64,000 nucleotides of DNA from NCBI GenBank assembly GCA_002269645.1, contig NIVC01000106.1, positions 248,001 through 312,000 of the forward strand, in the 5' to 3' direction. The DNA is from Macrostomum lignano (Eukaryota). Shown in pieces: positions 6,387 to 34,065 of the stretch. Numbering within the stretch: position 1 is the first letter of the stretch; the number at the start of each line of letters is the position of its first letter. Below the pieces are notes generated by a model that was given only the letters and a program-made list of their open reading frames with translations, had not been told where the DNA came from and did not search any database. Position numbers and translations under genes: made by a program.

Positions 6387-6983
6387 GCAATCCGGCCCGC
6401 TCAAGGCTCGGGTCCAACCTCTCTTCTCTTCTCCTCTCCTCTCCTCTCCTCTCCTCTCCTCCCTTCTCCTCTCCTCTCCTCTCCTCTCCTTTCCTCTCCT
6501 CTCCTCTCCTCTCCTCTCCTCTCCTCTCCTCTCCTCTCCTCTCCTCTCCTTTCCTCTCCTCTCCTCTCCTCTCCTCTCCTCTCCTCTCCTCTCCTCTCCT
6601 CCCTTCTCCTCTCCTCCCCTCTCCTCCCTTCTCCTCTCCTCTCCTCTCCTCTCCTTTCCTCTCCTCTCCTCTCCTCTCCTCTCCTCTCCTCTCCTCTCCT
6701 CTCCTCTCCTCTCCTCTCCTCTCCTCTCCTCTCCTCTCCTCTTCTCTACTCTCCTCTTCTCTCCTCTCCTCTTCTCTCCTCTCCTCTTCTCTCATCTCCT
6801 CTCCTCTCCTCTCCTCCCTCTCCTCTCCTCTCCTCTCCTCTTCTCTCATCTCCTCTCCTCTCCTCTCCTCCCCTCTCCTCTCCTCTCCTCTCCTCTCCTC
6901 TCCTCTTCTCTTCTCTCCTCTCCTCCCCTCTCCTCTTTCCTCCTCATCTGGCAAGCAGTCATGCGCTAGGTTTTCTATCTGGC
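6387..6983 (+). mobile_element. Putative dispersed element with (CTCCT)n core and conserved flanks, copy A
   Basis: 5' flank GCAATCCGGCCCGCTCAAGG and 3' flank GCAGTCATGCGCTAGGTTTTCTATCTGGC recur at other loci in the window. Confidence 0.6.
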
Positions 6984-7874
6984 TTTTGAGTCTGGCTTTG
7001 GCTTACACCGCCTGATAACAAGAAAGTCTGAGATCGGATTTACAGTACTGTATATGCTGTCTGCTAGCGTCTCTGTGTGCATGCACGGATGTGCCTGTGT
7101 TTGCGCTTGATTGTTGTCTCAACATCCTCATCAGATTAGAGTTACGGGCTAGTACTCAAAAATCAACCTGCAACTCGCGTGATAATTAATTGGTTTTTTT
7201 GCAAACTCATCGCAACATTCGCGTGTGTGTAACTTTTGAATTTTGTCAATCGAAGGTCACCGAAGACCCCTGGGAACATGGGTAGCAAACAACCAGTTCT
7301 ATAGGGAACTCCATAGGCCGTAATATGAGGCGAAGAGAGGATTAAAAGGTGCAGCAAAGTAGAATTACAAACTGTGTGAGCACATGCCAATTAGAAGGCA
7401 AGGTTTTCGTCATCATCACTGAGCAGTCTGTTTAGTTACGAGTAATTACAGCAAGTACTTTTTTGTCTTAAGTCTGCGTTGATTCAGCGTCCTCTTGTCT
7501 GTTTTGTTTGAAGCGGTCTGTAACCATGACAACACCTGTGTTTTATTGTATTCGGTTGTGCTGAAGATCCATGTTGAGTAACAGTTGAAATATATATAGC
7601 TTTAAGAAGCAGCTTCTATGTGTTAATAATAATACAAGTTCCTTTTCACAAGACTATTCTTCCCTCTGATAAACTCACGGATGTTGTGAGCTAAGATTGA
7701 ACTAAAGATTAAAAAGCCCTCTGCAATCAAGAAAAAGGCTTACCTGAATAACATTTTATGCTCTGCTTTAATACCATGGATTTTATGGTTGGGGACAAAG
7801 CCAAGAATTCTACATTACATGTTACACATGACTAAATTCCTACATGTACATAAATTTCAGAATCGGTGTTGTCA

Positions 7875-16000: not shown

Positions 16001-19000
16001 TAATTCTGCATTGCTTCAGTTCACCCAGCTGTAAAATGGGTGCCAGCATTAGCTGGGGTAATTGAGGGTGTGGGTGGCGACCCCCCAGTCCTTGGACTGA
16101 ACAGCCGTACGCAGCCTTCAGATGCGCCGCGCAATAGCTGCGGCTGAGCTGTCGGTTGCACATCTGGCCGTTAGGGTAGGTAAAATCAATAATTATTATT
16201 TATTTAATTCGTTCATATTACACTATATCTTCAGGAATTTATATCTACAAGCCTTTATATGGCGCTGTGAAGAAGCATCGAAAAAAACATTAAAACGCAT
16301 ACGCGAGATCTATATTTCAAGGATATGCGAGTTAATCGGCTTTATGTGCAGATTTTTTCAGCATTGGGGTCTTTGAAAGGAACCTGTGCAATTAGTTTCT
16401 AATTTGTGGCATTCTAATTTATTTTCTAGGGCTCAATTTTGGAACGGGTGTCTTTTGGATGATTAAAAGGAGATTTAGAGACCTAAAAGAAGATACATGT
16501 ACTAATATACACCGGATATTAAACCGCTGGAAAAAACTTATTTTTTCAAACCAAAACGCGCAGGCAACTTCGAGTCATCCGGGTGATCCGCCTGTTCCGT
16601 CTCATTGGCACGCTTCAGTTCACGCGCAAAATCATGAGAGCTGTGGTGAGCTCCATCAAGGATCTGGTGCCAGTTTTCGGGCTTTTTATGGCTCTGGTTG
16701 GATTCTTTAGCCTGTGCTCGTTGGTGTTCTACCGGCGTTCTCTGTTGGGCAAATGCGTCAACATTAACTACACTGCGATCTTTGACGGTGCAGGCGACGC
16801 TGCCAGCTACGACAGCGTAGCTGCGGCCTCCAGGGTCATGCACAATCGTTTTCTCAACTGGACAGACAACACGGACAATTGGCAGCCAGGACCGTTCGGA
16901 GCCCAGCGCTGCCCAGTGATCACATCTAGTCCGAACTGGTGGACCAGCATCATTGACGATCGCCAGATGCGCAAGTGCCCGGAGCCTTACCGGTGCATGC
17001 AGACTACCACGGGCAACCCGGACATGGGCTTCAGCAATTACGACACGCTGATGCTATCAATGTTGAGCACTTTCCGCTTACTGTGCCAGGACTGGTGGGA
17101 CAATTTGTTCGTTCAGTTGTCTTTAGTTAACGGTGGGCACGCAACAACGCTGTACTTCTTGGCCCTGATATTTCTAGGCTCGCACTATGTGATCAACTTA
17201 GTATTGTCTACTATTACGCTCTCATATCAGAGAAACGAACGATCGGAAGACACTGACGAGGATGAGCTGGCTAGGATGGCCGTGCTAATGCACGTTAATA
17301 GAGACAATTACCTTCGCAGACAAGTGGAAATCTATAATGTGCTGCTAGACCAACAGCGCAGTGGACTGACTGAACCAAAGTTTCTTCGAGAACTGAACGA
17401 ATCTCCCGTGGGCAGGTCGCCTTTGGTGGAAGCCTACATAGACGAGTATATAAAATCCTATTCCATGCAGCCGGGGCCCAACAGTCAGATAGGACGCAAG
17501 ACCAATGTGTACCTTAACGCTCTGAACATGGCGACCTCGCCAGGCAAAATAGGCGCTCGTCTGCGCGGCATGGTGGTTCGAAACGGCAGCACGGATGATT
17601 TGCCAATCGATCGGTTAATCAACTTCGTCATTCTGATGAATGTTGTCGAGATGCTAGTGGTAACTCCGGTTAATATACAATCGCAACAAATTATCGAAGG
17701 CACGAACAAGCTTTATACAATAATATTCACCCTGGAAGCTATAATTAAGATTCGCTATCAGCGTACTTATTATTTGAAGAATGACATAAACCGATTTGAC
17801 CTAATAATTGTATTCTTCTGTTTAATTGAGATGATGCTACCAACTAGCGGTAGCCGAATGGCAATGGTGCTTCGGATGACGCGTTTTCTCCGCTTATTCA
17901 AACTGGCTCGCGTGTCCAAGGAGCTTGAGAGGCTGCTAACCATAATGTTCCAGTCGTTCAGGTCCGAGATACCCCTGATTGTTGTCAGCTTTGTAGTCAT
18001 CCTGATAAGCGCTGGCATCGGCATGGTTATGTTTCAGGATGTTTACAAAAAGAATCCGCAATATTTAAGACCGACACAGAATTTCGCCGATTTATACAAC
18101 AGCATTCTGCTAGTTTTTCGTATTATGTGCGGCGAATGGACAGAAAACCTGTGGGTCTGCATGAAAATTATGGAATCAGCTCCAGACAAAGGATTCTGCG
18201 TCGCTTATTTTCTCACTAATCAGATAATAGTCAGTCTCATCATATTTCAGCTCTACATTGGTATTCTGCTGAGCAAGTTCTCAGAATTTCGATCATTGTC
18301 CCGCGAGCAGCAGGAGAGGGCGAGGGCGGAAGCGGAGGATGCGGGCCAAGAAAAGCCACTAAAGCCCCTACTTATGGAAAGGATTAAGGGCTTTTTAGCA
18401 AAAACTTTCGGCATTAATTTTGGCGTTGTAAGGGAGTCAGCGACGATGGGTGCTACAGATACGGCGTTCTCGCGTTTCCGAAACGCGCTGGCCGCAATAG
18501 CGAGCTATAGTTCCAGCTGGTACTCCAGGTATATAATAGCCATGACTATATTGAGTTCAGCAGCCCTAATACTCGACGATTACTATTTAAAAAGCGATCC
18601 GGGGCTTCAGAAAATATGCCAACACCTAGAAATAATTTTTTTGGTCGTGTTTGGCACAGAGGTGATCGTCAAGACTATCGCCTACGGGCCGCGCACTTAT
18701 TGCAGTAGTCCGTGGCGCATAATCGATGCTATCATTGTTCTTGTCTCGCTGGTTGACGTCGTTATTAACAACATCTACACCAAGGAAGTGAACCTAGCCA
18801 TGCTTCGGGTGATTAGAACTCTACGATGCCTGCGAATACTGCGCACAGCGAACGTGTGGGAGGGCTTCAAGCTCACAATCAGCGCACTATTCCGTTCGGT
18901 TGGCAGACTATTTTTTGCATTTCTCATTGTGATCATCGTCTGGCTGATGTTTGCTCTGGTGTCAACCAGCCTTTTCTCGAACAAGTTTTACAGATGCGTA

Positions 19001-20620
19001 CACGACGGTGTAGTGTTAAATAAGACAATAATACCAAACAAGGCGGCCTGTCTTAAAGCCAATTACAGTTGGGTCAATAAGCGAATCAACTTTGACACAA
19101 CGCCGCACGCGATGCTCGCTTTACTTGAGGTGTCCGTATTTAAAGGCTGGATTGACATCCTGCAGGACATCTCAAACTCGCCTAGTGCAATCGATGATCA
19201 GCCAGAAATCAACAATAACACAACGCTCAGCGTATTGATCTACATATTATTTATTATCATCGGCTCGTTCTTCATGATCGGCATGCTCATTGGTGTGATT
19301 GTTGACAGCTTCGAACAGGAGAGGATTAAAGTAGCCAAAATAGTGCTAACTGACGGTCAGAGACGACTGCAGAACACTCTGAAGCAGTACCTCATGTTTC
19401 CACTCAGTTCAGCCAAGCCGGTGACAGAGGGTTGGCTGTCAGAACGCTTACACGGAATCATCAATACAATCTATGTGGAAGTATTCTATCTGGTGCTAAT
19501 CTTAGTCAGCACTGTCATCATGGCTCTGCAATATCATCCCGGCAAAAGCAGATTGGTGCAAGTGTACTTAACTGTATTTGATGATATCATTCTATTCTGT
19601 TTTGTACTGGAGATTATAATGAAGATTCTTGGCGAAGGGTCTTACTATCTTGTGCCTCTAGTCAGCTGGAATCTGATCGACTTCCTCATCGTAGTACCGT
19701 CAGTGGTTGCGGAAGTCTGCGAAGAAGCCATCGAACTTCAATACCTTCGCGTGGTTCGTTTCGCCCGTGTCTTCCGCATGGGCCGCCTGTTGGCTCGATC
19801 AACGAACATAAAAACTGTGCGCGACATTCTGCTCGCCATGGTGGCCACCCTTCCTAGCATGTTGAACATGATCGCGCTGCTAATCATGGCAATTTGCATC
19901 TTTGCCATCGTTGGCGTCAATCTATTCAACGACCAGGAAGGCAACATAGCGCACCCGTTCAACGAGTTGTTCAACTTTCGCAGCTTCACAGCTACCTGGA
20001 GAATTCTGTTCATAGTAAGCACGGCGGCTGGATTCAATGACTACCTGGAAGGTACAATGCGATTTCCATATCCGTATTCTGTACTAGCCGTTGTTTTCTG
20101 GGTGTCCTACCTGTGCGTAGCCTTCTTTGTACTAACCAATCTGATAGTATCGGCTGTCGTATCCAGCTATAACGAGGTGTTTAACAATGAGGACTTCAAG
20201 ACGCAGTTACAAACGGCGGAAAAATTCACCAACCTGTGGAACGATTTCGATCAGAATGGTACAGGCAAAATGCATTCGAAGCACATAAACGAGCTGTTGG
20301 ATTTACTAACCGAACCGTTGCGAATGGCCCAGCCGAATTCGGGTGTGATTAGCTACATGGAAATACCACTCACCGACGACTATCACGTGTGCTACGGCGA
20401 CGTCATCACAGCTTTAGTGAAGGAGATTATGGAAGAAATGGGCCTGCTGGACAGCGAAACGGACGACATCAACCAGGAGATTAAACACACGGCATCCAAA
20501 CCGCCATTGAATACGCAGGTGATGTACAAGTTGCGCATGGCAACTGACGTGATTAAGACTGCCTGGAGACAGAAGAAGTTGCGACAAAGTTTGGCCAAAT
20601 TCAGTGAACTTCAGGACTAG
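13027..20620 (+). CDS. Divergent Nav1-type voltage-gated sodium channel alpha subunit, 1599 aa; exons 13027-13359, 15450-15859, 16564-20620
   Basis: Nav N-terminal domain (GIPLREVDPHY..TFVTV..YRF); four Arg-rich S4 helices; pore loops CQDWWD, CGEWTE, FKGWID, AAGFND giving DEKA; Nav EF-hand-like CTD and IQ-like segment. Intron phases 0 and 2 match; total 4800 nt. Confidence 0.93.
13405..14677. mobile_element. Possible MITE-like shell around the 20-bp array
   Basis: Imperfect terminal inverted repeats CAGCGGCCCACACAG vs CAGTGGCGTACGCAG (11/15) plus a subterminal CCGACACC at both ends; no clear target-site duplication. Confidence 0.4.
13500..14600. repeat. 20-bp minisatellite (GAGACAGGGGCGCCCACCAA / ..CCAACTA[A/T]) in Nav intron 1
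   Basis: About 55 tandem units with two variant blocks. Confidence 0.97.
15903..16207 (+). mobile_element. tRNA-headed CORE-type SINE in Nav intron 2
   Basis: A-box-like TAGCCTAGTGGGTAA and B-box GGTTCGATTC; 15981-16040 resembles the MIR/CORE consensus (GTGTCCTTGAGCAAGACGCTTAA...CTGTAAAATGGG); AT-rich tail. Confidence 0.75.
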
Positions 20621-21427: not shown

Positions 21428-21886
21428 TCACAATCGACAATGCCGAGCTAGGTGAACCAGATAAACCACACTAGCTGCAATTCCACCCATATTCAACGCC
21501 ATGCTAAGCCCGTGCAGACGACGGAAAGCTGTTTTATCCTTGCGCTTCAGAGCCTGACTGACCAGCGGGCCAAGGTACAGCTGGTGCAGCCAGGCGCTAG
21601 CGGTGCTGGCGCACAATACAGCCATGATTCCCAGATTGTTCTGAGCTAGGCGAGTCAAACTGAAGTGCTGCTGTGCGCTGCCTCGCAGCTGAATGTAGCT
21701 GCCCAGTAAGGCGGTGGACAGAATACTCTGAGACAAGAAGTAGCGAGGAAAAATGATAGATTGAACCTCTTGGAAAGTCTCAGATGACAGGGCCCTGAAC
21801 AGACTGGGTCCATGGACAAAGGTAACCCATAGCTGGGTGCCAAATTGGGCACCCCAGACTGACAGGTTTACTAGAGTGGATATCAT
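21428..21886 (-). CDS. TMEM205: Transmembrane protein 205 (DUF4149), single coding exon, 152 aa
   Basis: GTQLWVTFVHGPSLFRALSSETFQEVQSIIFPRYF matches the family motif (human [35 protein letters not shown]); C-terminal FRRLHGLSMALN. Confidence 0.92.
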   Translation of the reverse strand: MISTLVNLSVWGAQFGTQLWVTFVHGPSLFRALSSETFQEVQSIIFPRYFLSQSILSTALLGSYIQLRGSAQQHFSLTRLAQNNLGIMAVLCASTASAWLHQLYLGPLVSQALKRKDKTAFRRLHGLSMALNMGGIAASVVYLVHLARHCRL

Positions 21887-24811
21887 TTTAAATTGAAGCT
21901 GGTTTCTTTTCTCTGAAATAGCAAGTTTTTTGCGAGAATGATTTGGCCTGATGAATGTTCATACAAGATTTAAAACTACATATTTAGCCACTTGATGTTA
22001 TTTGAGATCTGACATAAAAACATGTTAACAATGAACACACCAATAAAATAGGATTATTGCCAAAGTGAACAATTTCCTTGTTGCTAATAGCCCCACAATC
22101 CCTTTCAATTGTCTATAACTGTTAGTCATCAATAACAATTTGTAAGCCCTCTTTAGAAGTTTAAAAAAATCACTTGGTCAAATTATTCTATGGCATCATA
22201 TTTGGAAAGGAAAAGCCAAAAAAATTGTTATTTGATATTATCAAAAAAACTTATAAATAAATTTAAAGGCATAGAATGGTACTCCCAGGTATTTTGATAT
22301 GAATGTTCTAGCCCTAGGCCCAATAAATGTTCCAAAAGCTAAAAAACTTCAAGTAAAGATTTTTGAAAGTTTTACCTCAACTAACATTTTGAATTGTTTA
22401 ACTAAAACACATAAGTGTATGACTTCTTAATTAAGCTAAAAATATAATATATAGGAAAAAGAAAACATATATACACATATATATAGGCTAATATTCTAGA
22501 ACTTTAATTATTAAGGATTATAAATTGATATATTTTGTCTATTGTCAATGAATATAGGATAAAAAGCAAGACCTTTCCCTTGCTATTTCTATAGTTACAT
22601 TAGAAATTGATGGTGGATATGACCAAAAAAGGATATTGACTTAGGCCTAGTCTTAAAATGGGTGCAAATATATTAGAGTGGCACTTTAGCTATTAGATTC
22701 TTTTTATTGGGATAGCAATGAATGTATAAAATTATAAAAAAACCCTATCTCTCTTGTTTCATTAGTATTTGACCCTAGTGGGGGCAGTGATACAATATCT
22801 TACAAAGGTCAAGGTGCAACTAGACATTGTTGAAAGGGTATTCTAGAGGACAAAGATTCAAAGGAGGGGAGAGAGGGTGGCACTATGGCTTTGTATTTTG
22901 GCAAAAAAATGCATGGTTTCCTTTCTAATTTTTGAAGAATCAAAATTCCTCAAAGGTTAGGCCTATGTGCCTAGGGGCCTAGGGGTCTATATTTTATCTT
23001 CAAAAGCTAGAAGTTGAATTGCCAATTGTAATTGTTATGTGATGGTGATTCTAACATAACATAAATATATAGCCTTTAGTTTATACTTTTTACTTGGTAT
23101 TGGTAATTAATTATCCACTATACTAAATTTTTTTGGCTATGTGACTAATAGGCAAGTGAAAGTTAATAATAGGCATAGCTAATAGTGTATAGTGGTAGAT
23201 AGACCTTAGATCTTAGTCTTAATCTTAGGTCTAGCTAGGCCTAGTAAATTATATAGAAATTAGCCTAGTTAGACATAGACTCATATAGAGCCTAGAACAA
23301 AGAAACATGTTAATGCTTCATTTTATACTATAGACCAAATGGATGAGTCTGTCTAATTTAAAAAGGCAGTCATGTCTCATGTGCATCTAAAAGCGATTTT
23401 TCAGTCCCAGTGGTGACATAAAATTCCATAAATAAGAGGGATAGAGTAGACTCCGCGATGGCAATAGGGTTATATCTCACAGCAAGGACTACTCAACTAG
23501 AGACACAACTCAACTAGAGAGTCTAGTTGAGTAGTCCGACCTTGTCTCACAGATGGTCGTCGTCGAAAACTTCGATTTTTGCTATATAATTTTATTACTA
23601 TACCCATATATACTAGTGTGATAGGTATTAACTTTTTTAAATACATTCTCCCCCCTAACATGGGATATCCCCAGTAAAAATCATGTAGCCTACGCCAACC
23701 AACAGGCCAGTCTTATAAAATTAGCCTAGATGCACTATGGCAAAGATGCATTATGGTTCCCAGAAAATTATTAAAGTGAATCGGTGCCATAAAAACTACG
23801 TTCATATGAATCAGGTGAAGTAGATGATTTTATATAAGGATCAGAATGTCTTGTTAGGATTTTTTCAATGACAATAGGTCAGGTTTTACAGGAAGAAACT
23901 AACAAGTTAGTAAGATTGTTATGAAATGGTGGATACTAAATAGATCTGAGCGCGTATATTAGAGTTGAGGATCGTGTTAAATTCCCCTTGCACGTACCCA
24001 AGCATGCGCATGAGCATTTTCCGAATAAAAAGTAAACTAAAACTGATGCTTTCTGGAAATCTCGTAAGCTTAACTAGCGGTACTTGGTTATAAATTTTAC
24101 GGAACGCCTTTTGTTGCAAAAATTATGCGTACGATGATCCATGACGGCAGGTTACGGTGTACATGTACTTCTTTATATAGTTGTTCGTGTCAGTAGCTAT
24201 AGCTAACTATCCAATGCGTCTCAAAGCTAAATATACTGATAAATTGTGAGTATTTGATTTTATTCTTGTAGCCCATCACGCCATTATCTGGTATTGTCGG
24301 CAAACGTTTGCGGAATTCGGAATGTTGAACACTGAACAGGCTGCAAAACATTTTAACGCTGCATTCGACTGCCAATATTCTACCTGTCTCTAAGATTGAA
24401 GACACCCGCAGGTGGAACTAAATGTAAATAAATAACAAGCCGTATAAGGTAATTTTGCTTTGCCCACACTCCGCATCCTGCATGTCGCGAAGCTCTTACA
24501 ATTAGAGGAGAGATGAAATTCTAAATTATACATGTATGTATAGGACGTATCGTTGAGTACCTATAATATACGCGCATGCGGTGTTTAATTTCAAAGCTAG
24601 CTAGTTATCCTCACAACAAGTAATTACAGTAGTACATGTAGCTACAGTATTGGCGCGCTTGTACATGTGTGCTCAGGAGTCAACGGAACGGGCAGAATTG
24701 CCGCGAGTTAACATCGTAAAGTTGTCAACAAAATGCCAAAATTAAAGGCTTAGTTTCCCAGTGAGTTTTTTTAAATCATGTACGAGCTATTTATTGATCA
24801 ATCGCAATGGT

Positions 24812-25066
24812 TTATAGCCAAACCAGCTCAAGGAACCAATAGTTAGAGTCTTCAGCAGTGGTACAGACCGGCAGTGACGGCCCAGCTCCGCAGGCATTAA
24901 GAAAGCAGGTCTTGCCAAACGAATCAAAATCGACAGATCCGCATCCGGCAGTGCGAGAGCAGTTGGCCAAACAGTCCGTCAGATTGTCAACAAAATATGG
25001 ACCGCCAACAAGATTGTAGCCAGGTGCGTAGCGACCAGCTTGGCCTAGGTAAACCTTGGCAGATTG
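24812..25066 (-). CDS. Duplicated, intact PAN/apple-domain terminal exon (84 aa plus stop)
   Basis: Reads identical to 28643-28897; CAG acceptor at 25067-25069; phase 0. Confidence 0.65.
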   Translation of the reverse strand, partial: QSAKVYLGQAGRYAPGYNLVGGPYFVDNLTDCLANCSRTAGCGSVDFDSFGKTCFLNACGAGPSLPVCTTAEDSNYWFLELVWL

Positions 25067-25147
25067 CTGAGGGATTTATAGTTTTTAAGTTTCTTGTTAC
25101 TATTACAAAAACTGTCTATCTTAGGGGGTTCATGGCAAGCTTTTTAA

Positions 25148-25598
25148 CTCAAAAAGTCAGATGCAGAATCTAGCGCATGACTGCAGACCAGAGAAAGGGT
25201 GAAGAGAGAAGGGAGAGAAGGGAGAGATAATGGAGAGGAGAAAAGAGAGAGGAGAGAACGGAGAGGAGAGAACGGAGAGGAGAGAACGGATAGGAGAGGA
25301 GAGAAGGCAATGGAATGAAGGGAGAGAGGAGAGAAGGGAGAGGAGAGAAAGGAGAGGAGAGAAGGAAGAGGAATGAAGGGAGAGGAGAGGAGAGGAGAGG
25401 AGAAGGGAGAGGGGAGAAGGAAGAGGAGAGGAGAGGAGAGGAGAGGAGAGGAGAGAAGGGAGAGGAGAGGAGGAAGAGGAGAGGAGAGGAGGCAGAGGAG
25501 AGGAGAGGAGAGAAGGGAGAGGAGAGGAGAGAAGGGAGAGGAGAGGAGAGAAGGGAGAGGAGAGGAGAGAAGGGAGAGGAGAGGAGAGAAGGGAGAGG
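25148..25598 (-). mobile_element. Microsatellite-cored element, copy C (3' flank plus GA-rich core, truncated by the duplication junction)
   Basis: Reverse complement reads CT-rich core followed by GCAGTCATGCGCTAGATTCTGCATCTGACTTTTTGAG. Confidence 0.55.
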
Positions 25599-25600
25599 AC

Positions 25601-25720
25601 CTCTTGGAAAGTCTCAGATGACAGGGCCCTGAACAGACTGGGTCCATGGACAAAGGTAACCCATAGCTGGGTGCCAAATTGGGCACCCCAGACTGACAGG
25701 TTTACTAGAGTGGATATCAT
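25601..25720 (-). pseudogene. TMEM205: 5' fragment of TMEM205 (codons 1-40) truncated at the duplication junction; possible first exon of a chimeric gene
   Basis: Identical to the first 40 codons of 21886-21767, then runs into GTCCTC and the CT-rich microsatellite. Confidence 0.85.
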
Positions 25721-28642
25721 TTTAAATTGAAGCTGGTTTCTTTTCTCTGAAATAGCAAGTTTTTTGCGAGAATGATTTGGCCTGATGAATGTTCATACAA
25801 GATTTAAAACTACATATTTAGCCACTTGATGTTATTTGAGATCTGACATAAAAACATGTTAACAATGAACACACCAATAAAATAGGATTATTGCCAAAGT
25901 GAACAATTTCCTTGTTGCTAATAGCCCCACAATCCCTTTCAATTGTCTATAACTGTTAGTCATCAATAACAATTTGTAAGCCCTCTTTAGAAGTTTAAAA
26001 AAATCACTTGGTCAAATTATTCTATGGCATCATATTTGGAAAGGAAAAGCCAAAAAAATTGTTATTTGATATTATCAAAAAAACTTATAAATAAATTTAA
26101 AGGCATAGAATGGTACTCCCAGGTATTTTGATATGAATGTTCTAGCCCTAGGCCCAATAAATGTTCCAAAAGCTAAAAAACTTCAAGTAAAGATTTTTGA
26201 AAGTTTTACCTCAACTAACATTTTGAATTGTTTAACTAAAACACATAAGTGTATGACTTCTTAATTAAGCTAAAAATATAATATATAGGAAAAAGAAAAC
26301 ATATATACACATATATATAGGCTAATATTCTAGAACTTTAATTATTAAGGATTATAAATTGATATATTTTGTCTATTGTCAATGAATATAGGATAAAAAG
26401 CAAGACCTTTCCCTTGCTATTTCTATAGTTACATTAGAAATTGATGGTGGATATGACCAAAAAAGGATATTGACTTAGGCCTAGTCTTAAAATGGGTGCA
26501 AATATATTAGAGTGGCACTTTAGCTATTAGATTCTTTTTATTGGGATAGCAATGAATGTATAAAATTATAAAAAAACCCTATCTCTCTTGTTTCATTAGT
26601 ATTTGACCCTAGTGGGGGCAGTGATACAATATCTTACAAAGGTCAAGGTGCAACTAGACATTGTTGAAAGGGTATTCTAGAGGACAAAGATTCAAAGGAG
26701 GGGAGAGAGGGTGGCACTATGGCTTTGTATTTTGGCAAAAATATGCATGGTTTCCTTTCTAATTTTTGAAGAATCAAAATTCCTCAAAGGTTAGGCCTAT
26801 GTGCCTAGGGGCCTAGGGGTCTATATTTTATCTTCAAAAGCTAGAAGTTGAATTGCCAATTGTAATTGTTATGTGATGGTGATTCTAACATAACATAAAT
26901 ATATAGCCTTTAGTTTATACTTTTTACTTGGTATTGGTAATTAATTATCCACTATACTAAATTTTTTTGGCTATGTGACTAATAGGCAAGTGAAAGTTAA
27001 TAATAGGCATAGCTAATAGTGTATAGCGGTAGATAGACCTTAGATCTTAGTCTTAATCTTAGGTCTAGCTAGGCCTAGTAAATTATATAGAAATTAGCCT
27101 AGTTAGACATAGACTCATATAGAGCCTAGAACAAAGAAACATGTTAATGCTTCATTTTATACTATAGACCAAATGGATGAGTCTGTCTAATTTAAAAAGG
27201 CAGTCATGTCTCATGTGCATCTAAAAGCGATTTTTCAGTCCCAGTGGTGACATAAAATTCCATAAATAAGAGGGATAGAGTAGACTCCGCGATGGCAATA
27301 GGGTTATATCTCACAGCAAGGACTACTCAACTAGAGACTCAACTCAACTAGAGAGTCTAGTTGAGTAGTCCGACCTTGTCTCACAGATGGTCGTCGTCGA
27401 AAACTTCGATTTTTGCTATATAATTTTATTACTATACCCATATATACTAGTGTGATAGGTATTAACTTTTTTAAATACATTCTCCCCCCTAACATGGGAT
27501 AGGCCTATCCCCAGTAAAAATCATGTAGCCTACGCCAACCAACAGGCCAGTCTTATAAAATTAGCCTAGATGCACTATGGCAAAGAGATGCATTATGGTT
27601 CCCAGAAAATTATTAAAGTGAATCGGTGCCATAAAAACTACGTTCATATGAATCAGGTGAAGTAGATGATTTTATATAAGGATCAGAATGTCTTGTTAGG
27701 ATTTTTTCAATGACAATAGGTCAGGTTTTACAGGAAGAAACTAATAAGTTACTAAGATTGTTATGAAATGGTGGATACTAAATAGATCTGAGCGCGTATA
27801 TTAGAGTTGAGGATCGTGTTAAATTCCCCTTGCACGTACCCAAGCATGCGCATGAGCATTTTCTGAATAAAAAGTAAACTAAAACTGATGCTTTCTGGAA
27901 ATCGCGTAGGCTTAACTAGCGGTACTTGGTTATAAATTTTACGGAACGCCTTTTGTTGCAAAAATTATGCGTACGATGATCCATGGCAGCAGGTTACGGT
28001 GTACATGTACTTCTTTATATAGTTGTTCGTGTCAGTAACTATAGCTACCTATCCAATGCGTCTCAAAGCTAAATATACTGATAAATTGTGAGTATTTGAT
28101 TTTATTCTTGTAGCCCATCACGCCATTATCTGGTATTGTCGGCAAACGTTTGCGGAATTCGGAATGTTGAACACTGAACAGGCTGCAAAACATTTTAACG
28201 CTGCATTCGACTGCCAATATTCTACCTGTCTCCAAGATTGAAGACACCCGCGGGTGGAACTAAATGTAAATAAATAACAAGCAGTATAAGGTAATTTTGC
28301 TTTGCCCACACCCGCATCCTGCATGTCGCGAAGCTCTTAAAATTAGAGGAGAGATGAAATCCTAAATTATACATGTATGTATAGGACGTATCGTTGAGTA
28401 CCTATAATATACGCGCATGCGGTGTTTAATTTCAAAGCTAGCTAGTTATCATCACAACAAGTAATTACAGCAGCTACAGTACATTGGCGCGCTTGTACAT
28501 GTGTGCTCAGAAGTCAGCGGAATGGGCAGAATTGACGCGAGTTAATAAATATCGTAAAATTGTCAACAAAAATGCCAAAATTGAAGGCTTAGTTTCCCTA
28601 GTGCGTTTTTTAATCATGTATTTATTGATCAATCGCAATGAT

Positions 28643-30770
28643 TTATAGCCAAACCAGCTCAAGGAACCAATAGTTAGAGTCTTCAGCAGTGGTACAGACC
28701 GGCAGTGACGGCCCAGCTCCGCAGGCATTAAGAAAGCAGGTCTTGCCAAACGAATCAAAATCGACAGATCCGCATCCGGCAGTGCGAGAGCAGTTGGCCA
28801 AACAGTCCGTCAGATTGTCAACAAAATATGGACCGCCAACAAGATTGTAGCCAGGTGCGTAGCGACCAGCTTGGCCTAGGTAAACCTTGGCAGATTGCTG
28901 AGGGATTTATAGTTTTTAAGTTTCTTGTTACTATTACAAAAACTGTCTATCTTAGGGGGTTCATGGCAAGCTTTTTAACTCAAAAAGTCAGATGCAGAAT
29001 CTAGCGCATGACTGCAGACCAGAGAAAGGGTGAAGAGAGAAGGGAGAGAAGGGAGAAAGAAGGGAGAGATAATGGAGAGGAGAGAAGAGAGAGGAGAGAA
29101 CGGAGAGGAGAGAACGGAGAGGAGAGAACGAATAGGAGAGGAGAGAAGGAAATGGAATGAAGGGAGAGGAGAGAAGGGAGGGGAGAGGAGAGGAGAGGAG
29201 AGGAGAGGAGAGGAGAGGAGAGGAGAGGAGAGAAGGGAGAGGAGAGAACGGAGAGGAGAGAACGAATAGGAGAGGAGAGAAGGAAATGGAATGAAGGGAG
29301 AGGAGAGAAGGGAGGGGAGAGGAGAGGAGAGGAGAGGAGAGGAGAGGAGAGGAGAGGAGAGGAGAGAAGGGAGAGGAGAGAACGGAGAGGAGAGAACGAA
29401 TAGGAGAGGAGAGAAGGAAATGGAATGAAGGGAGAGGAGAGAAGGGAGGGGAGAGGAGAGGAGAGGAGAGGAGAGGAGAGGAGAGGAGAGAAGGGAGAGG
29501 AGAGAACGGAGAGGAGAGAACGAATAGGAGAGGAGAGAAGGAAATGGAATGAAGGGAGAGTAGAGAAGGGAGGGGAGAGGAGAGGAGAGGAGAGGAGAGG
29601 AGAGGAGAGAAGGGAGAGGAGAGGAGGCAGAGGAGAGGAGAGGAGAGAAGAGAGAGGAGAGGAGAGGAGAGAAGGGAGAGGAGAGGAGATGAGAGAAGGG
29701 AGAGGAGAGGAGAGGAGAGGAGAGGAGAGGAGAGAAGAAGGGAGAGGGGAGAAGGAAGAGAGGAGGTAGAGGAGAGGAGAGGAGAGAAGGGAGAGGAGAG
29801 GAGAGGAGAGGAGAGAAGGGAGAGGAGAGGAGAGGAGAAGGGAGAGGAGAGGAGAGGAGAGAGGAGAGAAGGGCCGAGAGAAGAGTGAAGCCCTATTCAC
29901 TGCTAAGCGTGCGCATTTCTAGACCTACGCTGGTTGATTTGTATGGATCCATATGCAAAACAGCTCAGTGGTAAACGCGTCAGACTTCTCGCGCCAAGAC
30001 CCCTGGTTCGATTCCGTGCGCGGCCCATTCATTTGGGGCTTGTTTGCATGAAGATTAGCCAGAGTGAATTGGGCTGCGTGCAATTCACTGCACCCATGAG
30101 GGCCAAGCCCCCAGGGCGCAGAGAGTGAACATGCCTGACGATTAGAAGGTCAACAAAGGGCCGCTGTAACCTAGCAATCAGGCCGGTTAAGCCATGGCAT
30201 AAAGGCAGGGCTTCGATGCCAAAGCTCACAGGGGATGATGATATCTTAGGCTATAGATAGCAGGCTGTCAAGGCGGATGCTGTTTTTCTTTAAGCATCAA
30301 TTTCCTTAAGAAATTAACCAGAGTGATCGGAACAGCTACATATAGTCGAAGCTTCAATTAAACATGTAGCAATTATTTACCTTAACGAACACGGAACACA
30401 TCGATAGATTTCTGCTACTAGGAGGAGCGAGCAAAAACTTGTTGTACCCGGTTGACTCGACGCGTTTAGCCGCATCAATCAGACAGTTTGCATGAGGAGT
30501 TGCAGCGATGGCGGACGCTGCCGCCGGCAGCTGATCAAATGCGTCATCGTTACACGCTAGAAAAAAATCGCAGTCTAGCTTCGAAGCGCAGGCGCTGGCG
30601 CAATAAGCCGTAACTGCAGCCGCCCTGCCGGATAATTTGTGCTCTTCAACTGCGGAACTGGTAGACTGAATGAACTGCTCAACTCGCGTGCTACCGCTGA
30701 TTTTAATCAGCAGCAGTAGCACAAGCCATGTAACACATGATTTAAAGTTGTACATGCAGATTTTCGTCAT
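28643..30770 (-). CDS. Secreted protein with two PAN/apple-like domains, ~214 aa; coding exons 30770-30381 and 28897-28643; probable 5'UTR exon(s) near 32221-32298 and 32431
   Basis: Signal peptide (SCVTWLVLLLLIKISGS); YCASACASKLDCDFF..NCLI in exon 1; DCLANCSRTAGCGSVDFDSFGKTCFLN (C-x3-C-x5-C..C) in exon 2. AAG|GTAAAT donor and CAG acceptor both phase 0. Upstream acceptor TTTTAG at 30793-94 and donor AAG|GTAAGG at 32219-20. Confidence 0.8.
28979..29885 (-). mobile_element. Microsatellite-cored element, copy D, in the PAN gene intron
   Basis: Same 3' flank as copy C; its 5' flank differs from copies A and B. Confidence 0.55.
29955..30245 (+). mobile_element. tRNA-headed SINE-like element in the PAN gene intron
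   Basis: CAGCTCAGTGGTAA A-box and GGTTCGATTCC B-box with no complete acceptor stem; followed by a ~230-nt GC-richer body. Confidence 0.55.
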
Positions 30771-30821: not shown

Positions 30822-32380
30822 CTAACAGGTGACACTAACAGGTGACACTAACAGGTGACACTAATGCAGGTGACACTAATGCAGGTGACACTAATGCAGG
30901 TGACACTAATGCAGGTGACACTAATGCAGGTGACACTAACAGGTGACACTAATACAGGTGACACTAATACAGGTGACACTAATGCAGGTGACACTTACAG
31001 GTGACACTAATACAGGTGACACTAATGCAGGTGACACTAATACAGGTGACACTAATGCAGGTGACACTAACAGGTGACACTAATGCAGGTGACACTAATG
31101 CAGGTGACACTAATGCAGGTGACACTAACAGGTGACACTAACAGGTGACACTAATGCAGGTGACACTAATACAGGTGACACTAATGCAGGTGACACTAAT
31201 ACAGGTGACACTAACAGGTGACACTAACAGGTGACACTAATGCAGGTGACACTAATGCAGGTGACACTAATGCAGGTGACACTAACAGGTGACACTAATA
31301 CAGGTGACACTAATACAGGTGACACTAATGCAGGTGACACTTACAGGTGACACTAATACAGGTGACACTAATGCAGGTGACACTAATACAGGTGACACTA
31401 ATGCAGGTGACACTAACAGGTGACACTAATGCAGGTGACACTAATGCAGGTGACACTAATGCAGGTGACACTAACAGGTGACACTAACAGGTGACACTAA
31501 TGCAGGTGACACTAATACAGGTGACACTAATGCAGGTGACACTAATACAGGTGACACTAACAGGTGACACTAACAGGTGACACTAATGCAGGTGACACTA
31601 ATGCAGGTGACACTAATACAGGTGACACTAATGCAGGTGACACTAATGCAGGTGACACTAATGCAGGTGACACTAATGCAGGTGACACTAATGCAGGTGA
31701 CACTAACAGGTGACACTAATGCAGGTGACACTAATACAGGTGACACTAATGCAGGTGACACTAATGCAGGTGACACTAATGCAGGTGACACTAATGCAGG
31801 TGACACTAACAGGTGACACTAATGCAGGTGACACTAATGCAGGTGACACTAATACAGGTGACACTAATGCAGGTGACACTAATGCAGGTGACACTAATGC
31901 AGGTGACACTAATACAGGTGACACTAATGCAGGTGACACTAATACAGGTGACACTAATGCAGGTGACACTAATGCAGGTGACACTAATACAGGTGACACT
32001 AATGCAGGTGACACTAATGCAGGTGACACTAATGCAGGTGACACTAATGCAGGTGACACTAATGCAGGTGACACTAATACAGGTGACACTAATGCAGGTG
32101 ACACTAATGCAGGTGACACTGTCTACATGTAACGGTGACACTATCCAACAGGTGACACTAACAGGTGACACTAACAGGTGACACTAACAGGTGACACTAT
32201 CTAATTCAGTAATTCCTTACCTTGGGGTTTCTATAGGGGCTTCGCGGCCTATTCGCGGCGCCTGCGCCCCCCGCCAGTAGTAAGTAGTAAGACACAATCT
32301 AACAGGTGACACTATATCCAACAGGTGGCACTATCTAACATGTGACACTAACAGGTGACAACAACAGGTGACACTGTCTA
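30822..32380. repeat. 15-bp (13-bp variant) minisatellite ATGCAGGTGACACTA filling the 5'UTR intron of the PAN gene, with a few more units at 32300-32380
   Basis: About 95 units, each containing CAGGTG. Confidence 0.97.
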
Positions 32381-33234: not shown

Positions 33235-34065
33235 CTTGGATTGACCAATCTGTATATTGGATTGACCAATCTATAAGTTGGATTGAACAATCTGTATATT
33301 AGACTGACCAATCTGTATATTGGATTGACCAATCTGTAAAATAGATTAACCACAATCTGTACATTAGATTAACCACAATCTGTACAGTAGATTAACCACA
33401 ATCTGTACATTAGATTAACCACAATCTGTACATTAGATTAACCACAATCTGTACATTAGATTAACCACAATCTGTACAGTAGATTAACCTCAATCTGTAC
33501 ATTAGATTAACCACAGTCTGTACATTAGATTAACCACAATCTGTACATTAGATTAACCACAATCTGTACATTAGATTAACCACAATCTGTACATTAGATT
33601 AACCACAATCTGTACAGTAGATTAACCACAATCTGTACATTAGATTAACCACAATCTGTACAGTAGATTAACCTCAATCTGTACATTAGATTAACCACAA
33701 TCTGTACAGTAGATTAACCACAATCTGTACATTAGATTAACCACAATCTGTACAGTAGATTAACCTCAATCTGTACATTAGATTAACCACAATCTGTACA
33801 GTAGATTAACCACAATCTGTACAGTAGATTAACCACAATCTGTACAGTAGATTAACCACAATCTGTACAGTAGATTAACCACAATCTGTACAGTAGATTA
33901 ACCACAATCTGTACAGTAGATTAACCACAATCTGTACAGTAGATTAACCACAATCTGTACAGTAGATTAACCACAATCTGTACAGTAGATTAACCACAAT
34001 CTGTACAGTAGATTAACCACAATCTGTACATTAGATTAACCAATCTATACATTGGATTGAACAAT
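33235..34065. repeat. 21/23-bp minisatellite (TGTACATTAGATTAACCACAATC) just 3' of KLHDC9
   Basis: Tandem units visible. Confidence 0.95.

What the first reader, a model, noticed from the sequence alone, without database searches (positions are those of the whole stretch)
24812..25720. Duplication junction could create a young chimeric gene: TMEM205 TM1 spliced in frame to a PAN domain
Seen: the duplicated TMEM205 fragment stops exactly after codon 40 (CAA GAG) and is followed by GT (25600-25599). The microsatellite and the duplicated PAN intron end follow, then the intact phase-0 PAN exon at 25066. Splicing 25600-25067 (534 nt, GT..AG) gives a 124-aa ORF: a 40-aa hydrophobic TMEM205 N-terminus plus 84 aa of PAN domain. 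The fragment keeps ~2.9 kb of native TMEM205 upstream sequence, so it is probably transcribed. Caveat: the donor GAG|GTCCTC is weak at +3 to +6; unspliced read-through gives the 187-aa S/L/P-rich ORF instead.
Basis: partly seen in the sequence, partly recalled or inferred. Interest (0 to 1): 0.72.

Follow-up and report, generated by a model that had tools for sequence, protein, structure and literature searches.

The report
Tandem duplication junction, unsupported chimeric gene
One of three assembled copies of this flatworm (Macrostomum lignano) locus carries a 3.8-kb head-to-tail duplication that puts the first 40 codons of a TMEM205-like gene in front of a spare last exon of a PAN-domain gene, but the splice proposed to fuse them relies on a GT no better than a random one, and the RNA-based annotation shows no fusion.

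Summary
The sequence description is correct. The window is M. lignano Mlig_3_7 contig NIVC01000106.1. Window 21765-25599 and 25599-29457 are a direct tandem duplication. Each unit holds part of a CT-microsatellite, the last exon of a two-exon secreted PAN/Apple gene, 2.9 kb of intergenic DNA and the first 122 nt of a single-exon DUF4149/TMEM205 ORF. Two other assembled copies of the locus (L002, L003) are single-copy, so the duplication is derived.

The "donor" GT is just the first two bases of parental codon 41 (GTT). GAG|GTCCTC matches none of the species' GT[G/A]AG donor motif, and 54% of all GTs in the window score at least as well on a rough yardstick. The RNA-seq-derived GenBank annotation records only an 84-aa, ATG-less product starting exactly at the acceptor (25066). 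No 124-aa fusion is on record.

New caveat: copy A and its upstream flank are about 99.8-99.9% identical to contig L003. Copy B and its downstream flank differ from L003 by about 1.1-1.4%. The junction therefore sits where the haplotype relationship changes. That means either a real unequal exchange or haplotype-mosaic contig, or a false duplication in the assembly.

If the junction is real, I expect read-through RNA or spliced-leader trans-splicing onto the orphan exon, not the cis-spliced chimera. Interest is low to moderate.

The parts
25599..29457 (-). Duplication unit, upstream copy A. It holds part of the CT-microsatellite in the PAN intron, PAN terminal exon 2A, the 2.9-kb intergenic/promoter region and the first 122 nt of the TMEM205-like ORF.
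   Evidence: Self-BLAST at 96.7% over 3882 columns. Outside the microsatellite it has 3 mismatches in 3431 nt to the single-copy locus L003.
21765..25599 (-). Duplication unit, downstream copy B. It holds a shorter microsatellite, PAN exon 2B, the intergenic region and the start of the intact TMEM205-like gene.
   Evidence: It has 39 mismatches in about 3420 nt to both copy A and L003.
25598..25599 (-). Duplication junction (breakpoint 25599|25598). TMEM205 codon 41 'GT' abuts the microsatellite 'CCTCTCCC'. At most 1 nt (T) of microhomology.
   Evidence: The parent reads GAGGT|TCAATC; the junction reads GAGGT|CCTCTC.
25601..25720 (-). Truncated TMEM205/DUF4149 fragment: ATG plus codons 1-40, identical to the parent.
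   Evidence: Within the 124-aa chimera, Pfam DUF4149 scores 26.9 bits over profile positions 3-38 of 102.
25599..25600 (-). Proposed splice donor GT (GAG|GTCCTC), which is parental codon 41.
   Evidence: Scores -5.4 bits on a rough donor yardstick; 54% of the 6971 GTs in the window score at least as well. No match to GT[G/A]AG.
25704..25705 (-). Alternative phase-0 GT after codon 5 (CTA|GTAAAC). It is the best donor-like site in phase 0 between the fragment's ATG and the PAN acceptor, but still poor.
   Evidence: -1.5 bits, with 16% of all GTs scoring at least as well.
25190..25598 (-). CT-rich microsatellite, copy B (GGAGA-type units on the + strand). It forms most of the putative 534-nt intron and of the 187-aa read-through ORF.
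   Evidence: Tandem Repeats Finder.
25157..25720 (-). Read-through ORF of 187 aa: TMEM205 residues 1-40 plus an S/L/P-rich low-complexity tail.
   Evidence: Not on record as a called gene anywhere.
25067..25199 (-). Unique 3' end of the PAN intron, copy B, with acceptor ...aaatccctcAG at 25068-25067. Identical to copy A (29030-28898).
24812..25066 (-). PAN terminal exon 2B: 84 codons plus TAA, phase 0, six Cys, no Met. GenBank annotates exactly this span as an 84-aa product.
   Evidence: Pfam PAN_1 24.2 bits, above the 21.4 cut-off. Identical in all four copies: A, B, L002, L003.
24790..24795 (-). AATAAA poly(A) signal 17 nt downstream of the exon 2B stop codon.
   Evidence: Read directly.
21428..21886 (-). 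Intact parental TMEM205-like gene: one 152-codon ORF with no intron at codon 40/41.
   Evidence: Pfam DUF4149 E = 2e-18. Annotated as a 155-aa 5'-partial product.
30381..30770 (-). Native PAN gene exon 1: 130 codons, with a signal peptide and a Cys-rich region. It ends in phase 0 at the strong donor AAG|GTAAAT.
   Evidence: The peptide is present in UniProt A0A1I8JP10.
28643..28897 (-). PAN terminal exon 2A, the native partner of exon 1 across a 1483-nt intron. Exon 1 plus exon 2A gives a 214-aa secreted protein.
29026..29885 (-). CT-rich microsatellite, copy A, inside the native PAN intron. It is longer than copy B and has a 134-bp higher-order unit.
   Evidence: The same structure is seen in L003.

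Best explanation
This is a young 3.83-kb head-to-tail segmental duplication in one copy of a Macrostomum lignano locus. The ancestral gene order on the minus strand is PAN/Apple gene (2 exons), then 2.9 kb of intergenic DNA, then a single-exon DUF4149/TMEM205-like gene.

One breakpoint lies in the CT-microsatellite of the PAN intron. The other lies after nucleotide 122 of the TMEM205 ORF. The junction therefore leaves three things: (i) a promoter-bearing but truncated TMEM205 5' fragment, (ii) a microsatellite, and (iii) a redundant, orphan copy of the PAN terminal exon with its acceptor and poly(A) signal. The intact PAN gene (exon 1 + exon 2A) and the intact TMEM205 gene remain at the two outer ends.

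Shown:
- the anatomy;
- the derived state relative to two single-copy loci;
- the absence of any good cis donor between the fragment's ATG and the orphan acceptor;
- an annotated RNA model that begins at the acceptor.

Inferred:
- RNA started at the fragment's promoter is mostly not cis-spliced into the proposed 124-aa fusion.
- Instead it either reads through (187-aa low-complexity ORF, ending at the exon-2B poly(A) site) or, because an acceptor with no upstream donor is the known substrate for spliced-leader addition in this species, receives the spliced leader at 25066.
- PAN exon 1 may also occasionally splice to exon 2B, which gives the normal PAN protein.
- On this reading the junction is a gene relic plus a spare exon, not an established chimeric gene.
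For: Duplication and its limits.

Single-copy architecture elsewhere. L003 3553-10143 aligns to window 32199-25599, and L003 6300-17924 aligns to window 25599-14000, so both flanks overlap on one copy of the unit. L002 is also single-copy, with a retrotransposon insertion.

The duplication postdates the split from L002. Copies A and B share 98 substitutions against L002 and differ from each other at 39 sites.

Parent gene. It is an uninterrupted 152-codon DUF4149 ORF that reads GAG GTT at codons 40/41.

Donor quality (rough yardstick):
- proposed donor: -5.4 bits, at the median of all GTs;
- native PAN donor: +5.2 bits, top 0.4%;
- no GT between 25720 and 25067 scores above -1.1 bits.
The species donor motif is GT[G/A]AG, found at 65% of annotated donors (PMC8629364).

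Annotation.
- The only product on record for this exon is 84 aa and starts at 25066. No gene is called at the fragment or at copy A.
- The annotation was built from StringTie/TACO transcriptional units cut at experimentally mapped spliced-leader and poly(A) sites, with TransDecoder ORFs (PMC5730564).
- An in-frame TAA at 25078-25076 means an ATG-less ORF can start at 25066 only if the transcript model starts there.

Spliced-leader biology.
- The M. lignano spliced leader ends in ATG.
- An acceptor without a cis donor is the stated requirement for spliced-leader addition (PMC8629364).
- The terminal AUG of the flatworm spliced leader can initiate translation (Cheng 2006, as cited in PMC9851317).

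Assembly. The window has no Ns, so the junction lies inside a Canu contig, not at an SSPACE join.
Against: - No read-level evidence for the junction or for any RNA across it could be obtained.
- Copy A plus the upstream flank is 99.8-99.9% identical to contig L003. Copy B plus the downstream flank is 1.1-1.4% diverged from it. A false haplotype duplication would give the same pattern.
- The published assembly has 180 Mb of redundant blocks, and only 64% of its bases are error-free by REAPR.
- The 84-aa model could arise from multi-mapped exon reads without any spliced-leader event. It is called only at copy B although exon 2 is identical at four places. That fits a truncated transcriptional unit at least as well as a spliced-leader site.
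- The acceptor CCTCAG matches the trans-acceptor motif [T/C]TNCAG only in its CAG.
- Low-level use of the weak donor cannot be excluded, because the annotation discarded novel transcripts below 0.5 RPKM.
- My donor yardstick uses generic metazoan frequencies recalled from memory, not an M. lignano-trained model.
Confidence: 0.6

Rival explanations
1. Assembly artefact. The contig joins two haplotypes (or near-identical chromosome copies) of a single-copy locus, and their 3.8-kb overlap has been laid down twice. On this reading no such junction exists in any worm chromosome.
For: - Copy A differs from contig L003 by 3 of 3431 nt, and the upstream flank by 6 of 3219 nt. Copy B differs by 39 of 3418 nt, and the downstream flank by about 104 of 7250 nt.
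- 17 sites group A with L003 against B with L002. The two 'copies' therefore look like two alleles, not like sister copies.
- One breakpoint lies in a microsatellite, a classic place for an assembly to break.
- DV1 carries extra large chromosomes, and Mlig_3_7 has 180 Mb of blocks that are at least 95% identical (PMC5730564).
Against: - There are no Ns at or near the junction, so it lies inside a Canu contig built from about 130x PacBio data.
- The junction abuts unique coding sequence directly onto the microsatellite, with at most 1 nt of shared sequence. A spurious read overlap cannot produce that (inference).
- A random chimeric read would very rarely rejoin the same locus 3.8 kb away in the same orientation (inference).
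- The last 1.4 kb of the unit is identical in A, B and L003. A true junction plus a haplotype switch inside that identical stretch, or an origin by unequal exchange between homologues, explains the pattern equally well.
Confidence: 0.25
2. Transcripts from the duplicated TMEM205 promoter are cis-spliced from GAG|GT (25601|25600) to the PAN acceptor (25067|25066). The result is a 124-aa protein with TMEM205 TM1 fused to a PAN domain.
For: - The frame is open and the arithmetic is correct.
- The exon side of the donor (GAG) is consensus-like.
- The acceptor is the native, functional PAN acceptor, identical to copy A.
- In the genes tested in this species, up to 2 kb of upstream DNA was sufficient for promoter activity (PMC5730564), and 2.9 kb is retained here.
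Against: - The donor fails +3 to +6, scores at the median of random GTs, and is ordinary coding sequence in the parent.
- A somewhat better phase-0 GT exists after codon 5.
- The annotation's longest product at this gene is 84 aa, not 124 aa.
- The N-terminal segment is weakly hydrophobic (0.87, against 1.84 for the native signal peptide). Export of the six-Cys PAN module is therefore doubtful.
- The junction itself is unverified.
Confidence: 0.06
3. Spliced-leader rescue of the orphan exon. The acceptor at 25067 lacks an upstream donor and is treated as the end of an outron. The spliced leader, which ends in AUG, is added in phase 0. The mRNA then encodes Met plus 84 aa: a stand-alone PAN module without a signal peptide, expressed under TMEM205 control.
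For: - The annotated ATG-less 84-aa product starts exactly at the acceptor. The annotation pipeline cuts transcriptional units at mapped spliced-leader sites.
- The spliced leader ends in ATG, and the exon is in phase 0 with no internal Met.
- The outron rule and the precedent for initiation at the spliced-leader AUG are documented.
- No usable cis donor lies upstream.
Against: - Exon 2 is identical at four loci but the model exists only at copy B, so spliced-leader reads cannot by themselves be copy-specific.
- The acceptor only partly fits the trans-acceptor motif.
- The Met+84 protein is not on record.
- A cytosolic six-Cys PAN module is unlikely to fold into a functional domain (inference).
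Confidence: 0.2

Closest known systems
Chimeric genes formed at tandem-duplication junctions. In the textbook mechanism, breakpoints in two neighbouring genes join the 5' part of the downstream gene to the 3' part of the upstream gene. This is well documented in Drosophila population surveys (from my own knowledge).
   Same: Head-to-tail duplication. One breakpoint lies in each of two same-strand neighbouring genes. The junction carries promoter plus 5' coding sequence of the downstream gene (TMEM205-like), followed by the 3' exon of the upstream gene (PAN). The parental genes stay intact at the outer ends.
   Different: The two coding parts are not fused directly. They are separated by 534 nt that would have to be removed using a non-consensus GT. 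No transcript or gene model supports the fusion, and the junction is not confirmed by reads.
Outron / spliced-leader trans-splicing logic. An acceptor without an upstream cis donor receives the spliced leader (Conrad et al. 1993, as cited in PMC8629364). [quoted passage not shown] 2006, as cited in PMC9851317).
   Same: M. lignano trans-splices about 30% of its genes with a leader ending in ATG. The orphan exon has an intact acceptor, no usable upstream donor, phase 0 and no Met of its own. The gene model starts at the acceptor.
   Different: Spliced-leader usage at this site was not observed here. The acceptor matches the published trans-acceptor motif only in CAG. In its native context this acceptor is an internal cis acceptor.
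False heterotype duplications in long-read assemblies of heterozygous or polyploid genomes (from my own knowledge of the assembly-quality literature).
   Same: The two copies differ at haplotype-level divergence (1.1%). One copy is nearly identical to another contig. One breakpoint is in a microsatellite. The assembly is known to be redundant.
   Different: There is no gap or contig end at the junction, and unique sequence abuts the repeat with no overlap that could mislead an overlap-based assembler.

Membership tests
Chimeric gene born at a tandem-duplication junction | Tandem direct duplication with breakpoints inside two different same-strand genes | tested here: met
   Breakpoints lie after nt 122 of the DUF4149 ORF and inside the PAN intron microsatellite. 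Loci L002 and L003 are single-copy.
Chimeric gene born at a tandem-duplication junction | A continuous reading frame across the junction, either direct or through functional splice sites | tested here: not met
   There is no direct fusion. The frame needs a splice from GAG|GTCCTC, which lacks the GT[G/A]AG motif and scores at the median of all GTs. Read-through gives low-complexity sequence that stops before the PAN exon.
Chimeric gene born at a tandem-duplication junction | A transcript spanning both parental parts | tested here: inconclusive
   The RNA-seq-derived annotation lists only an 84-aa product starting at 25066 and nothing at the fragment. Reads could not be inspected.
Chimeric gene born at a tandem-duplication junction | Genomic junction confirmed independently of one assembly | not testable with these tools
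   No read sets or other M. lignano assemblies are searchable here. The 187-aa junction ORF is not on record.
DUF4149 / TMEM205 (PF13664) | Match to the Pfam profile above its gathering score | tested here: met
   The parent scores 66.9 bits against a cut-off of 24.6, over profile positions 3-99 of 102. The fragment within the chimera scores 26.9 bits, over profile positions 3-38 only.
PAN/Apple domain (PF00024) | Match above the gathering score, with the Cys pattern | tested here: met
   Exon 2 scores 24.2 bits and the native protein 26.5 bits, against a cut-off of 21.4. The 84 aa contain six Cys. An exhaustive search found 36 relatives at E <= 1e-3; 3 of 4 sampled are PAN-repeat proteins.
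Spliced-leader trans-spliced gene of M. lignano | Acceptor with no cis donor upstream in the same pre-mRNA | tested here: met
   No GT between 25720 and 25067 scores above -1.1 bits; the native PAN donor scores +5.2.
Spliced-leader trans-spliced gene of M. lignano | Acceptor motif [T/C]TNCAG | tested here: inconclusive
   The site reads CCTCAG. The CAG is present but the T at -5 is absent. Fewer than half of the annotated trans-acceptor sites carry the motif: 9551 of 21,754.
Spliced-leader trans-spliced gene of M. lignano | Spliced-leader-containing reads at the site | not testable with these tools
   The only evidence is indirect: the gene model starts exactly at the acceptor, and the pipeline cuts at spliced-leader sites.
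False (heterotype) duplication in an assembly | The copies correspond to different haplotypes, not to sister copies | tested here: met
   A vs L003 is 0.09%, B vs L003 is 1.14% and A vs B is 1.14%. At 17 sites A equals L003 and B equals L002. The flanks show the same contrast.
False (heterotype) duplication in an assembly | Junction at a gap, a contig end or a spurious repeat overlap | tested here: not met
   The window has no Ns. The junction joins unique coding sequence to the repeat with at most 1 nt in common.
False (heterotype) duplication in an assembly | Read depth of one copy over the duplicated unit, and no spanning reads | not testable with these tools
   No read data are available.

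The most novel reading that the evidence does not exclude
The junction is real, and the duplicated TMEM205 promoter now drives an RNA whose only usable splice site is the orphan PAN acceptor. The spliced leader is added there in phase 0, and its terminal AUG supplies the start codon. A former internal exon thereby becomes a free-standing 85-aa gene under new regulation. That would be gene birth by 'outron creation' at a duplication junction, a route open only to trans-splicing animals.
Probability: 0.12. Interest if true: 0.6.

Novelty: new member of a known kind. Interest (0 to 1): 0.22.

Why it matters
If the junction is real, it is a clean, datable example of what a tandem duplication with breakpoints in two genes leaves behind in a spliced-leader trans-splicing animal. 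It leaves a truncated gene fragment with its promoter and a spare terminal exon. It could show whether such orphan acceptors are captured by the spliced leader, whose AUG can start translation, instead of by weak cis donors.

In practice it matters mainly as a caution. In the redundant Mlig_3_7 assembly, an apparent young duplication can coincide with a haplotype switch, and "chimeric gene" calls made from sequence alone need read support. The finding also shows that the 214-aa two-exon PAN gene is missing from the GenBank annotation at all three loci, while a fragmentary 84-aa model is present.

Tried and rejected
1. Exact-sequence look-ups. The 187-aa read-through ORF and the Met+84 product are not on record.
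2. Homology search with the chimera. It returned only the window's own 84-aa model and the TMEM205 paralogue cluster, and no protein covering both halves. The search with the native PAN protein returned only a UniProt model holding exon 1.
3. A species-specific donor matrix from window genes. I abandoned this because the neighbouring ion-channel gene is almost entirely one 1345-codon exon. A generic donor matrix recalled from memory was used as a rough yardstick instead, together with the published M. lignano motif.
4. TMEM205 as a downstream operon gene. The three annotated TMEM205 models start 9, 18 and 21 nt upstream of the ATG, not at one acceptor. The 'g3' suffix reflects clustering of similar transcripts. 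I therefore dropped this idea.
5. A tRNA or other known RNA in the PAN intron. ARAGORN and Rfam found nothing.
6. A spliced-leader RNA gene in the window. None was found.
7. L003 as a recent collapse of the duplicated allele. This is rejected because L003's downstream flank differs by about 1.4% from the window's.
Full report
**Origin of the window.** A homology search with the proposed 124-aa chimera returned two proteins. One is an 84-aa protein encoded by the window itself. The other is a Macrostomum lignano "hypothetical protein BOX15_Mlig000757g3, partial". Looking up the 84-aa protein placed the window on contig NIVC01000106.1 (981 kb) of assembly GCA_002269645.1, which is Mlig_3_7. Locus L001 is 100% identical to window 35066-14812. 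All genes discussed lie on the window's minus strand.

- The ATG at 25720 opens 40 codons (25720-25601) that are identical to the start of an intact 152-codon ORF at 21886-21428. That ORF is a DUF4149/TMEM205-family protein (Pfam E = 2e-18).
- GT follows at 25600-25599. Then come a CT-rich microsatellite (about 25598-25190), 133 nt of unique sequence, AG at 25068-25067, and an 84-codon exon with TAA (25066-24812).
- Deleting 25600-25067 (534 nt) gives an open 124-aa frame. Without splicing, the ORF is the 187-aa S/L/P-rich one.
- Self-comparison shows a direct tandem duplication: 21765-25599 against 25599-29457, 96.7% over 3882 columns.
- Outside the microsatellite the copies differ by about 39 substitutions and a dozen indels. 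These cluster between 28641 and 27339. The PAN exon, its intron tail and the last 1.1 kb, including the TMEM205 fragment, are identical.

**The native PAN gene.**
- I found the native upstream exon of the PAN gene at 30770-30381. It has 130 codons, a signal peptide, the donor AAG|GTAAAT, and ends in phase 0.
- The native gene is therefore exon 1, a 1483-nt intron containing the microsatellite, and exon 2A (28897-28643). It encodes a 214-aa secreted protein.
- Its exon-2 part passes the Pfam PAN_1 threshold (26.5 bits against 21.4).
- An exhaustive search with exon 2 found 36 relatives at E <= 1e-3. Three of four that I sampled are PAN-repeat proteins.

- The parent reads GAG GTT CAA at codons 40-42. 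The GT is therefore duplicated parental sequence, and the breakpoint is 25599|25598.
- The 40-aa N-terminus is only weakly hydrophobic. Its best 19-aa Kyte-Doolittle window is 0.87, against 1.84 for the native PAN signal peptide.

**The duplication is derived.** The TMEM205 protein cluster has three members, on three contigs. I fetched the other two loci.
- L002 (NIVC01000612.1) has one PAN exon 1, one exon 2 and one TMEM205 gene. It also carries a 4.6-kb Ty3/gypsy-like LTR retrotransposon between them.
- L003 (NIVC01000424.1) is also single-copy. L003 3553-10143 aligns to window 32199-25599, and L003 6300-17924 aligns to window 25599-14000. Both flanks of the junction thus overlap on one copy of the unit, which is the pre-duplication arrangement.
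- Copies A and B share 98 substitutions against L002. The duplication therefore postdates the split from that more distant copy, which is about 3.5% diverged.

**A complication: the haplotype relationship changes at the junction.**
- In the four-way alignment, copy A differs from L003 at only 3 of 3431 sites. Copy B differs from both A and L003 at 39 sites (1.14%).
- At 17 sites A and L003 share one base while B and L002 share the other.
- The flanks behave the same way. The window upstream of copy A is 0.1-0.3% from L003 (6 of 3219 nt). The window downstream of copy B is about 1.4% from L003 (about 104 of 7250 nt).
- The contig's relationship to L003 therefore changes somewhere between 27027 and 24810, an interval that contains the junction.

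Three readings fit this pattern:
- (a) a real duplication formed by unequal exchange between two homologues;
- (b) a real junction in one haplotype, with the contig switching haplotype inside the 1.4-kb stretch where A, B and L003 are identical;
- (c) a false "heterotype" duplication made by the assembler.

In favour of (c), the assembly is known to be redundant. It has 180 Mb in blocks of at least 95% identity, only 64% of its bases are error-free by REAPR, and DV1 carries extra large chromosomes (PMC5730564). Against (c), three points:
- The window has no Ns, so the junction is inside a Canu contig and not at an SSPACE join.
- Unique coding sequence abuts the repeat with at most 1 nt in common, which a spurious overlap cannot create.
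- A random chimeric read would very rarely rejoin the same locus 3.8 kb away in the same orientation.

The last two points are inference. I put reading (c) at about 0.25.

**Does the junction make the proposed chimeric gene?** The evidence is against it.
- The M. lignano cis-donor motif is GT[G/A]AG, found at 122,399 of 187,627 annotated donors (PMC8629364). The candidate is GTCCT.
- On a rough generic donor matrix the candidate scores -5.4 bits, and 54% of the 6971 GT dinucleotides in the window score at least as well. The native PAN exon-1 donor scores +5.2, in the top 0.4%.
- No GT between the fragment's ATG and the acceptor scores above -1.1 bits. The best phase-0 site is CTA|GTAAAC after codon 5 (-1.5 bits). 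It would give MISTL plus 84 aa, without the TMEM205 helix.
- The same GAG GTT lies inside the uninterrupted parental ORF, within the stretch matched by the DUF4149 profile.

**What the annotation shows.**
- The GenBank annotation was built from RNA-seq. StringTie/TACO transcriptional units were cut by the TBONE pipeline at mapped spliced-leader and poly(A) sites, and ORFs were called by TransDecoder. Transcripts overlapping repeats, and novel transcripts below 0.5 RPKM, were removed (PMC5730564).
- At this exon the annotation records, as the longest product, an 84-aa ATG-less protein that begins exactly at 25066. It records nothing at the TMEM205 fragment or at copy A.
- An in-frame TAA lies at 25078-25076. 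Such an ORF can be called only if the transcript model itself starts at 25066-25068, that is, at the acceptor.
- A dominant 25601|25066 splice would have produced a complete 124-aa ORF instead.
- This is indirect evidence, and it does not exclude a rare isoform.

**What is more likely made, if the junction is real.**
- M. lignano trans-splices about 30% of its genes with a 35-nt leader that ends in ATG. The stated requirement for trans-splicing is an acceptor with no cis donor upstream (PMC8629364).
- The flatworm leader's terminal AUG can serve as initiator (Cheng et al. 2006, cited in PMC9851317).
- RNA started at the duplicated TMEM205 promoter has exactly such an unpaired acceptor, in phase 0, in front of an exon with no Met. 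In the genes tested in this species, up to 2 kb upstream was sufficient for promoter activity.
- Spliced-leader addition at 25066 would therefore give Met plus 84 aa, which matches the shape of the annotated model.

I treat this as the most interesting open reading, not as shown, for three reasons:
- Exon 2 is identical at four places, yet the model exists only at copy B. A transcriptional unit truncated by read multi-mapping explains that at least as well.
- The acceptor CCTCAG fits the trans-acceptor motif [T/C]TNCAG only in CAG.
- A six-Cys PAN module without a signal peptide would probably not fold into a functional domain (inference).

The other outcomes I consider likely are plain read-through to the AATAAA at 24795-24790, encoding the 187-aa low-complexity ORF, and occasional splicing of PAN exon 1 to exon 2B, which yields the normal PAN protein.

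**Comparison with known kinds.**
- The architecture is the textbook one for chimeric genes born at tandem-duplication junctions. It fails the test of a functional reading frame across the junction. The tests of a spanning transcript and of an independently confirmed junction could not be run.
- It resembles spliced-leader/outron logic in anatomy only.
- It shares with false heterotype duplications the haplotype signature, but not the gap or overlap signature.

**Verdict.**
- The cis-spliced TMEM205-PAN chimera is not supported (about 0.06).
- This is an ordinary young duplication, or an assembly problem, in a repeat-rich polyploid genome. It carries one modestly interesting and testable possibility involving the spliced leader.
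- Interest is 0.22.

Noticed in passing
window 30770-30381 + 28897-28643 (also L002 268-657 + 2184-2438; L003 4982-5371 + 6846-7100): A two-exon, 214-aa secreted PAN/Apple gene is intact at all three loci but is not called as a gene at any of them in the GenBank annotation. The only related records are the 84-aa exon-2 fragment at copy B and a UniProt model (A0A1I8JP10) that holds the exon-1 peptide and then diverges.
   Followed up: partly
PAN exons, window vs L002: The PAN exons differ from the distant copy L002 at 1 of 645 nt, with exon 2 identical in all four copies. Adjacent non-coding DNA differs by about 3.5%, and the TMEM205 ORF by 16 of 459 nt (4 amino-acid changes). That points to strong constraint or gene conversion on the PAN exons, with not even synonymous differences.
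   Followed up: no
L002 2630-7262: A 4.6-kb insertion, absent from the window and from L003, is a Ty3/gypsy-like LTR retrotransposon. Its 1064-aa ORF has protease, RT, RNase H and integrase zinc-binding domains, and a 252-aa integrase-like ORF follows. It sits between PAN exon 2 and TMEM205.
   Followed up: partly
window about 29960-30045 (minus strand, inside the PAN intron): A stretch resembles the 3' half of a tRNA on the opposite strand (GGTTCGATTCC-type T-arm). It may be a tRNA-derived SINE remnant. ARAGORN and Rfam did not call it.
   Followed up: partly
window 30826-32199, 33287-34042, 34478-34862, 35277-35705; also 763-1614 and 2580-5388: Between the Kelch-repeat gene and the PAN gene almost all DNA is tandem array, with periods of 15, 23, 41/81 and 16 bp. 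Further kilobase-scale arrays lie near the window start. Array lengths differ between the three loci.
   Followed up: no
window 6431-6991 and 9751-11142: A CT-rich microsatellite about 80% similar to the one in the PAN intron occurs at 6431-6991. Another low-complexity stretch at 9751-11142 produces a spurious 463-aa S/L-rich ORF, like the 187-aa read-through ORF at the junction.
   Followed up: no
window 16583-20620 (+ strand): The neighbouring voltage-gated ion-channel gene (Ion_trans, annotated product 1599 aa) is encoded almost entirely by one 1345-codon exon. It is convergent with TMEM205. In L003 the corresponding model is only 866 aa.
   Followed up: no
window 21895 / L002 10001 / L003 10001: The three annotated TMEM205 models are all '5'-partial' only because the ORF stays open upstream of the ATG to the model's 5' end (9, 18 and 21 nt). 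The 5' UTR is therefore very short, and the true protein is probably 152 aa.
   Followed up: partly
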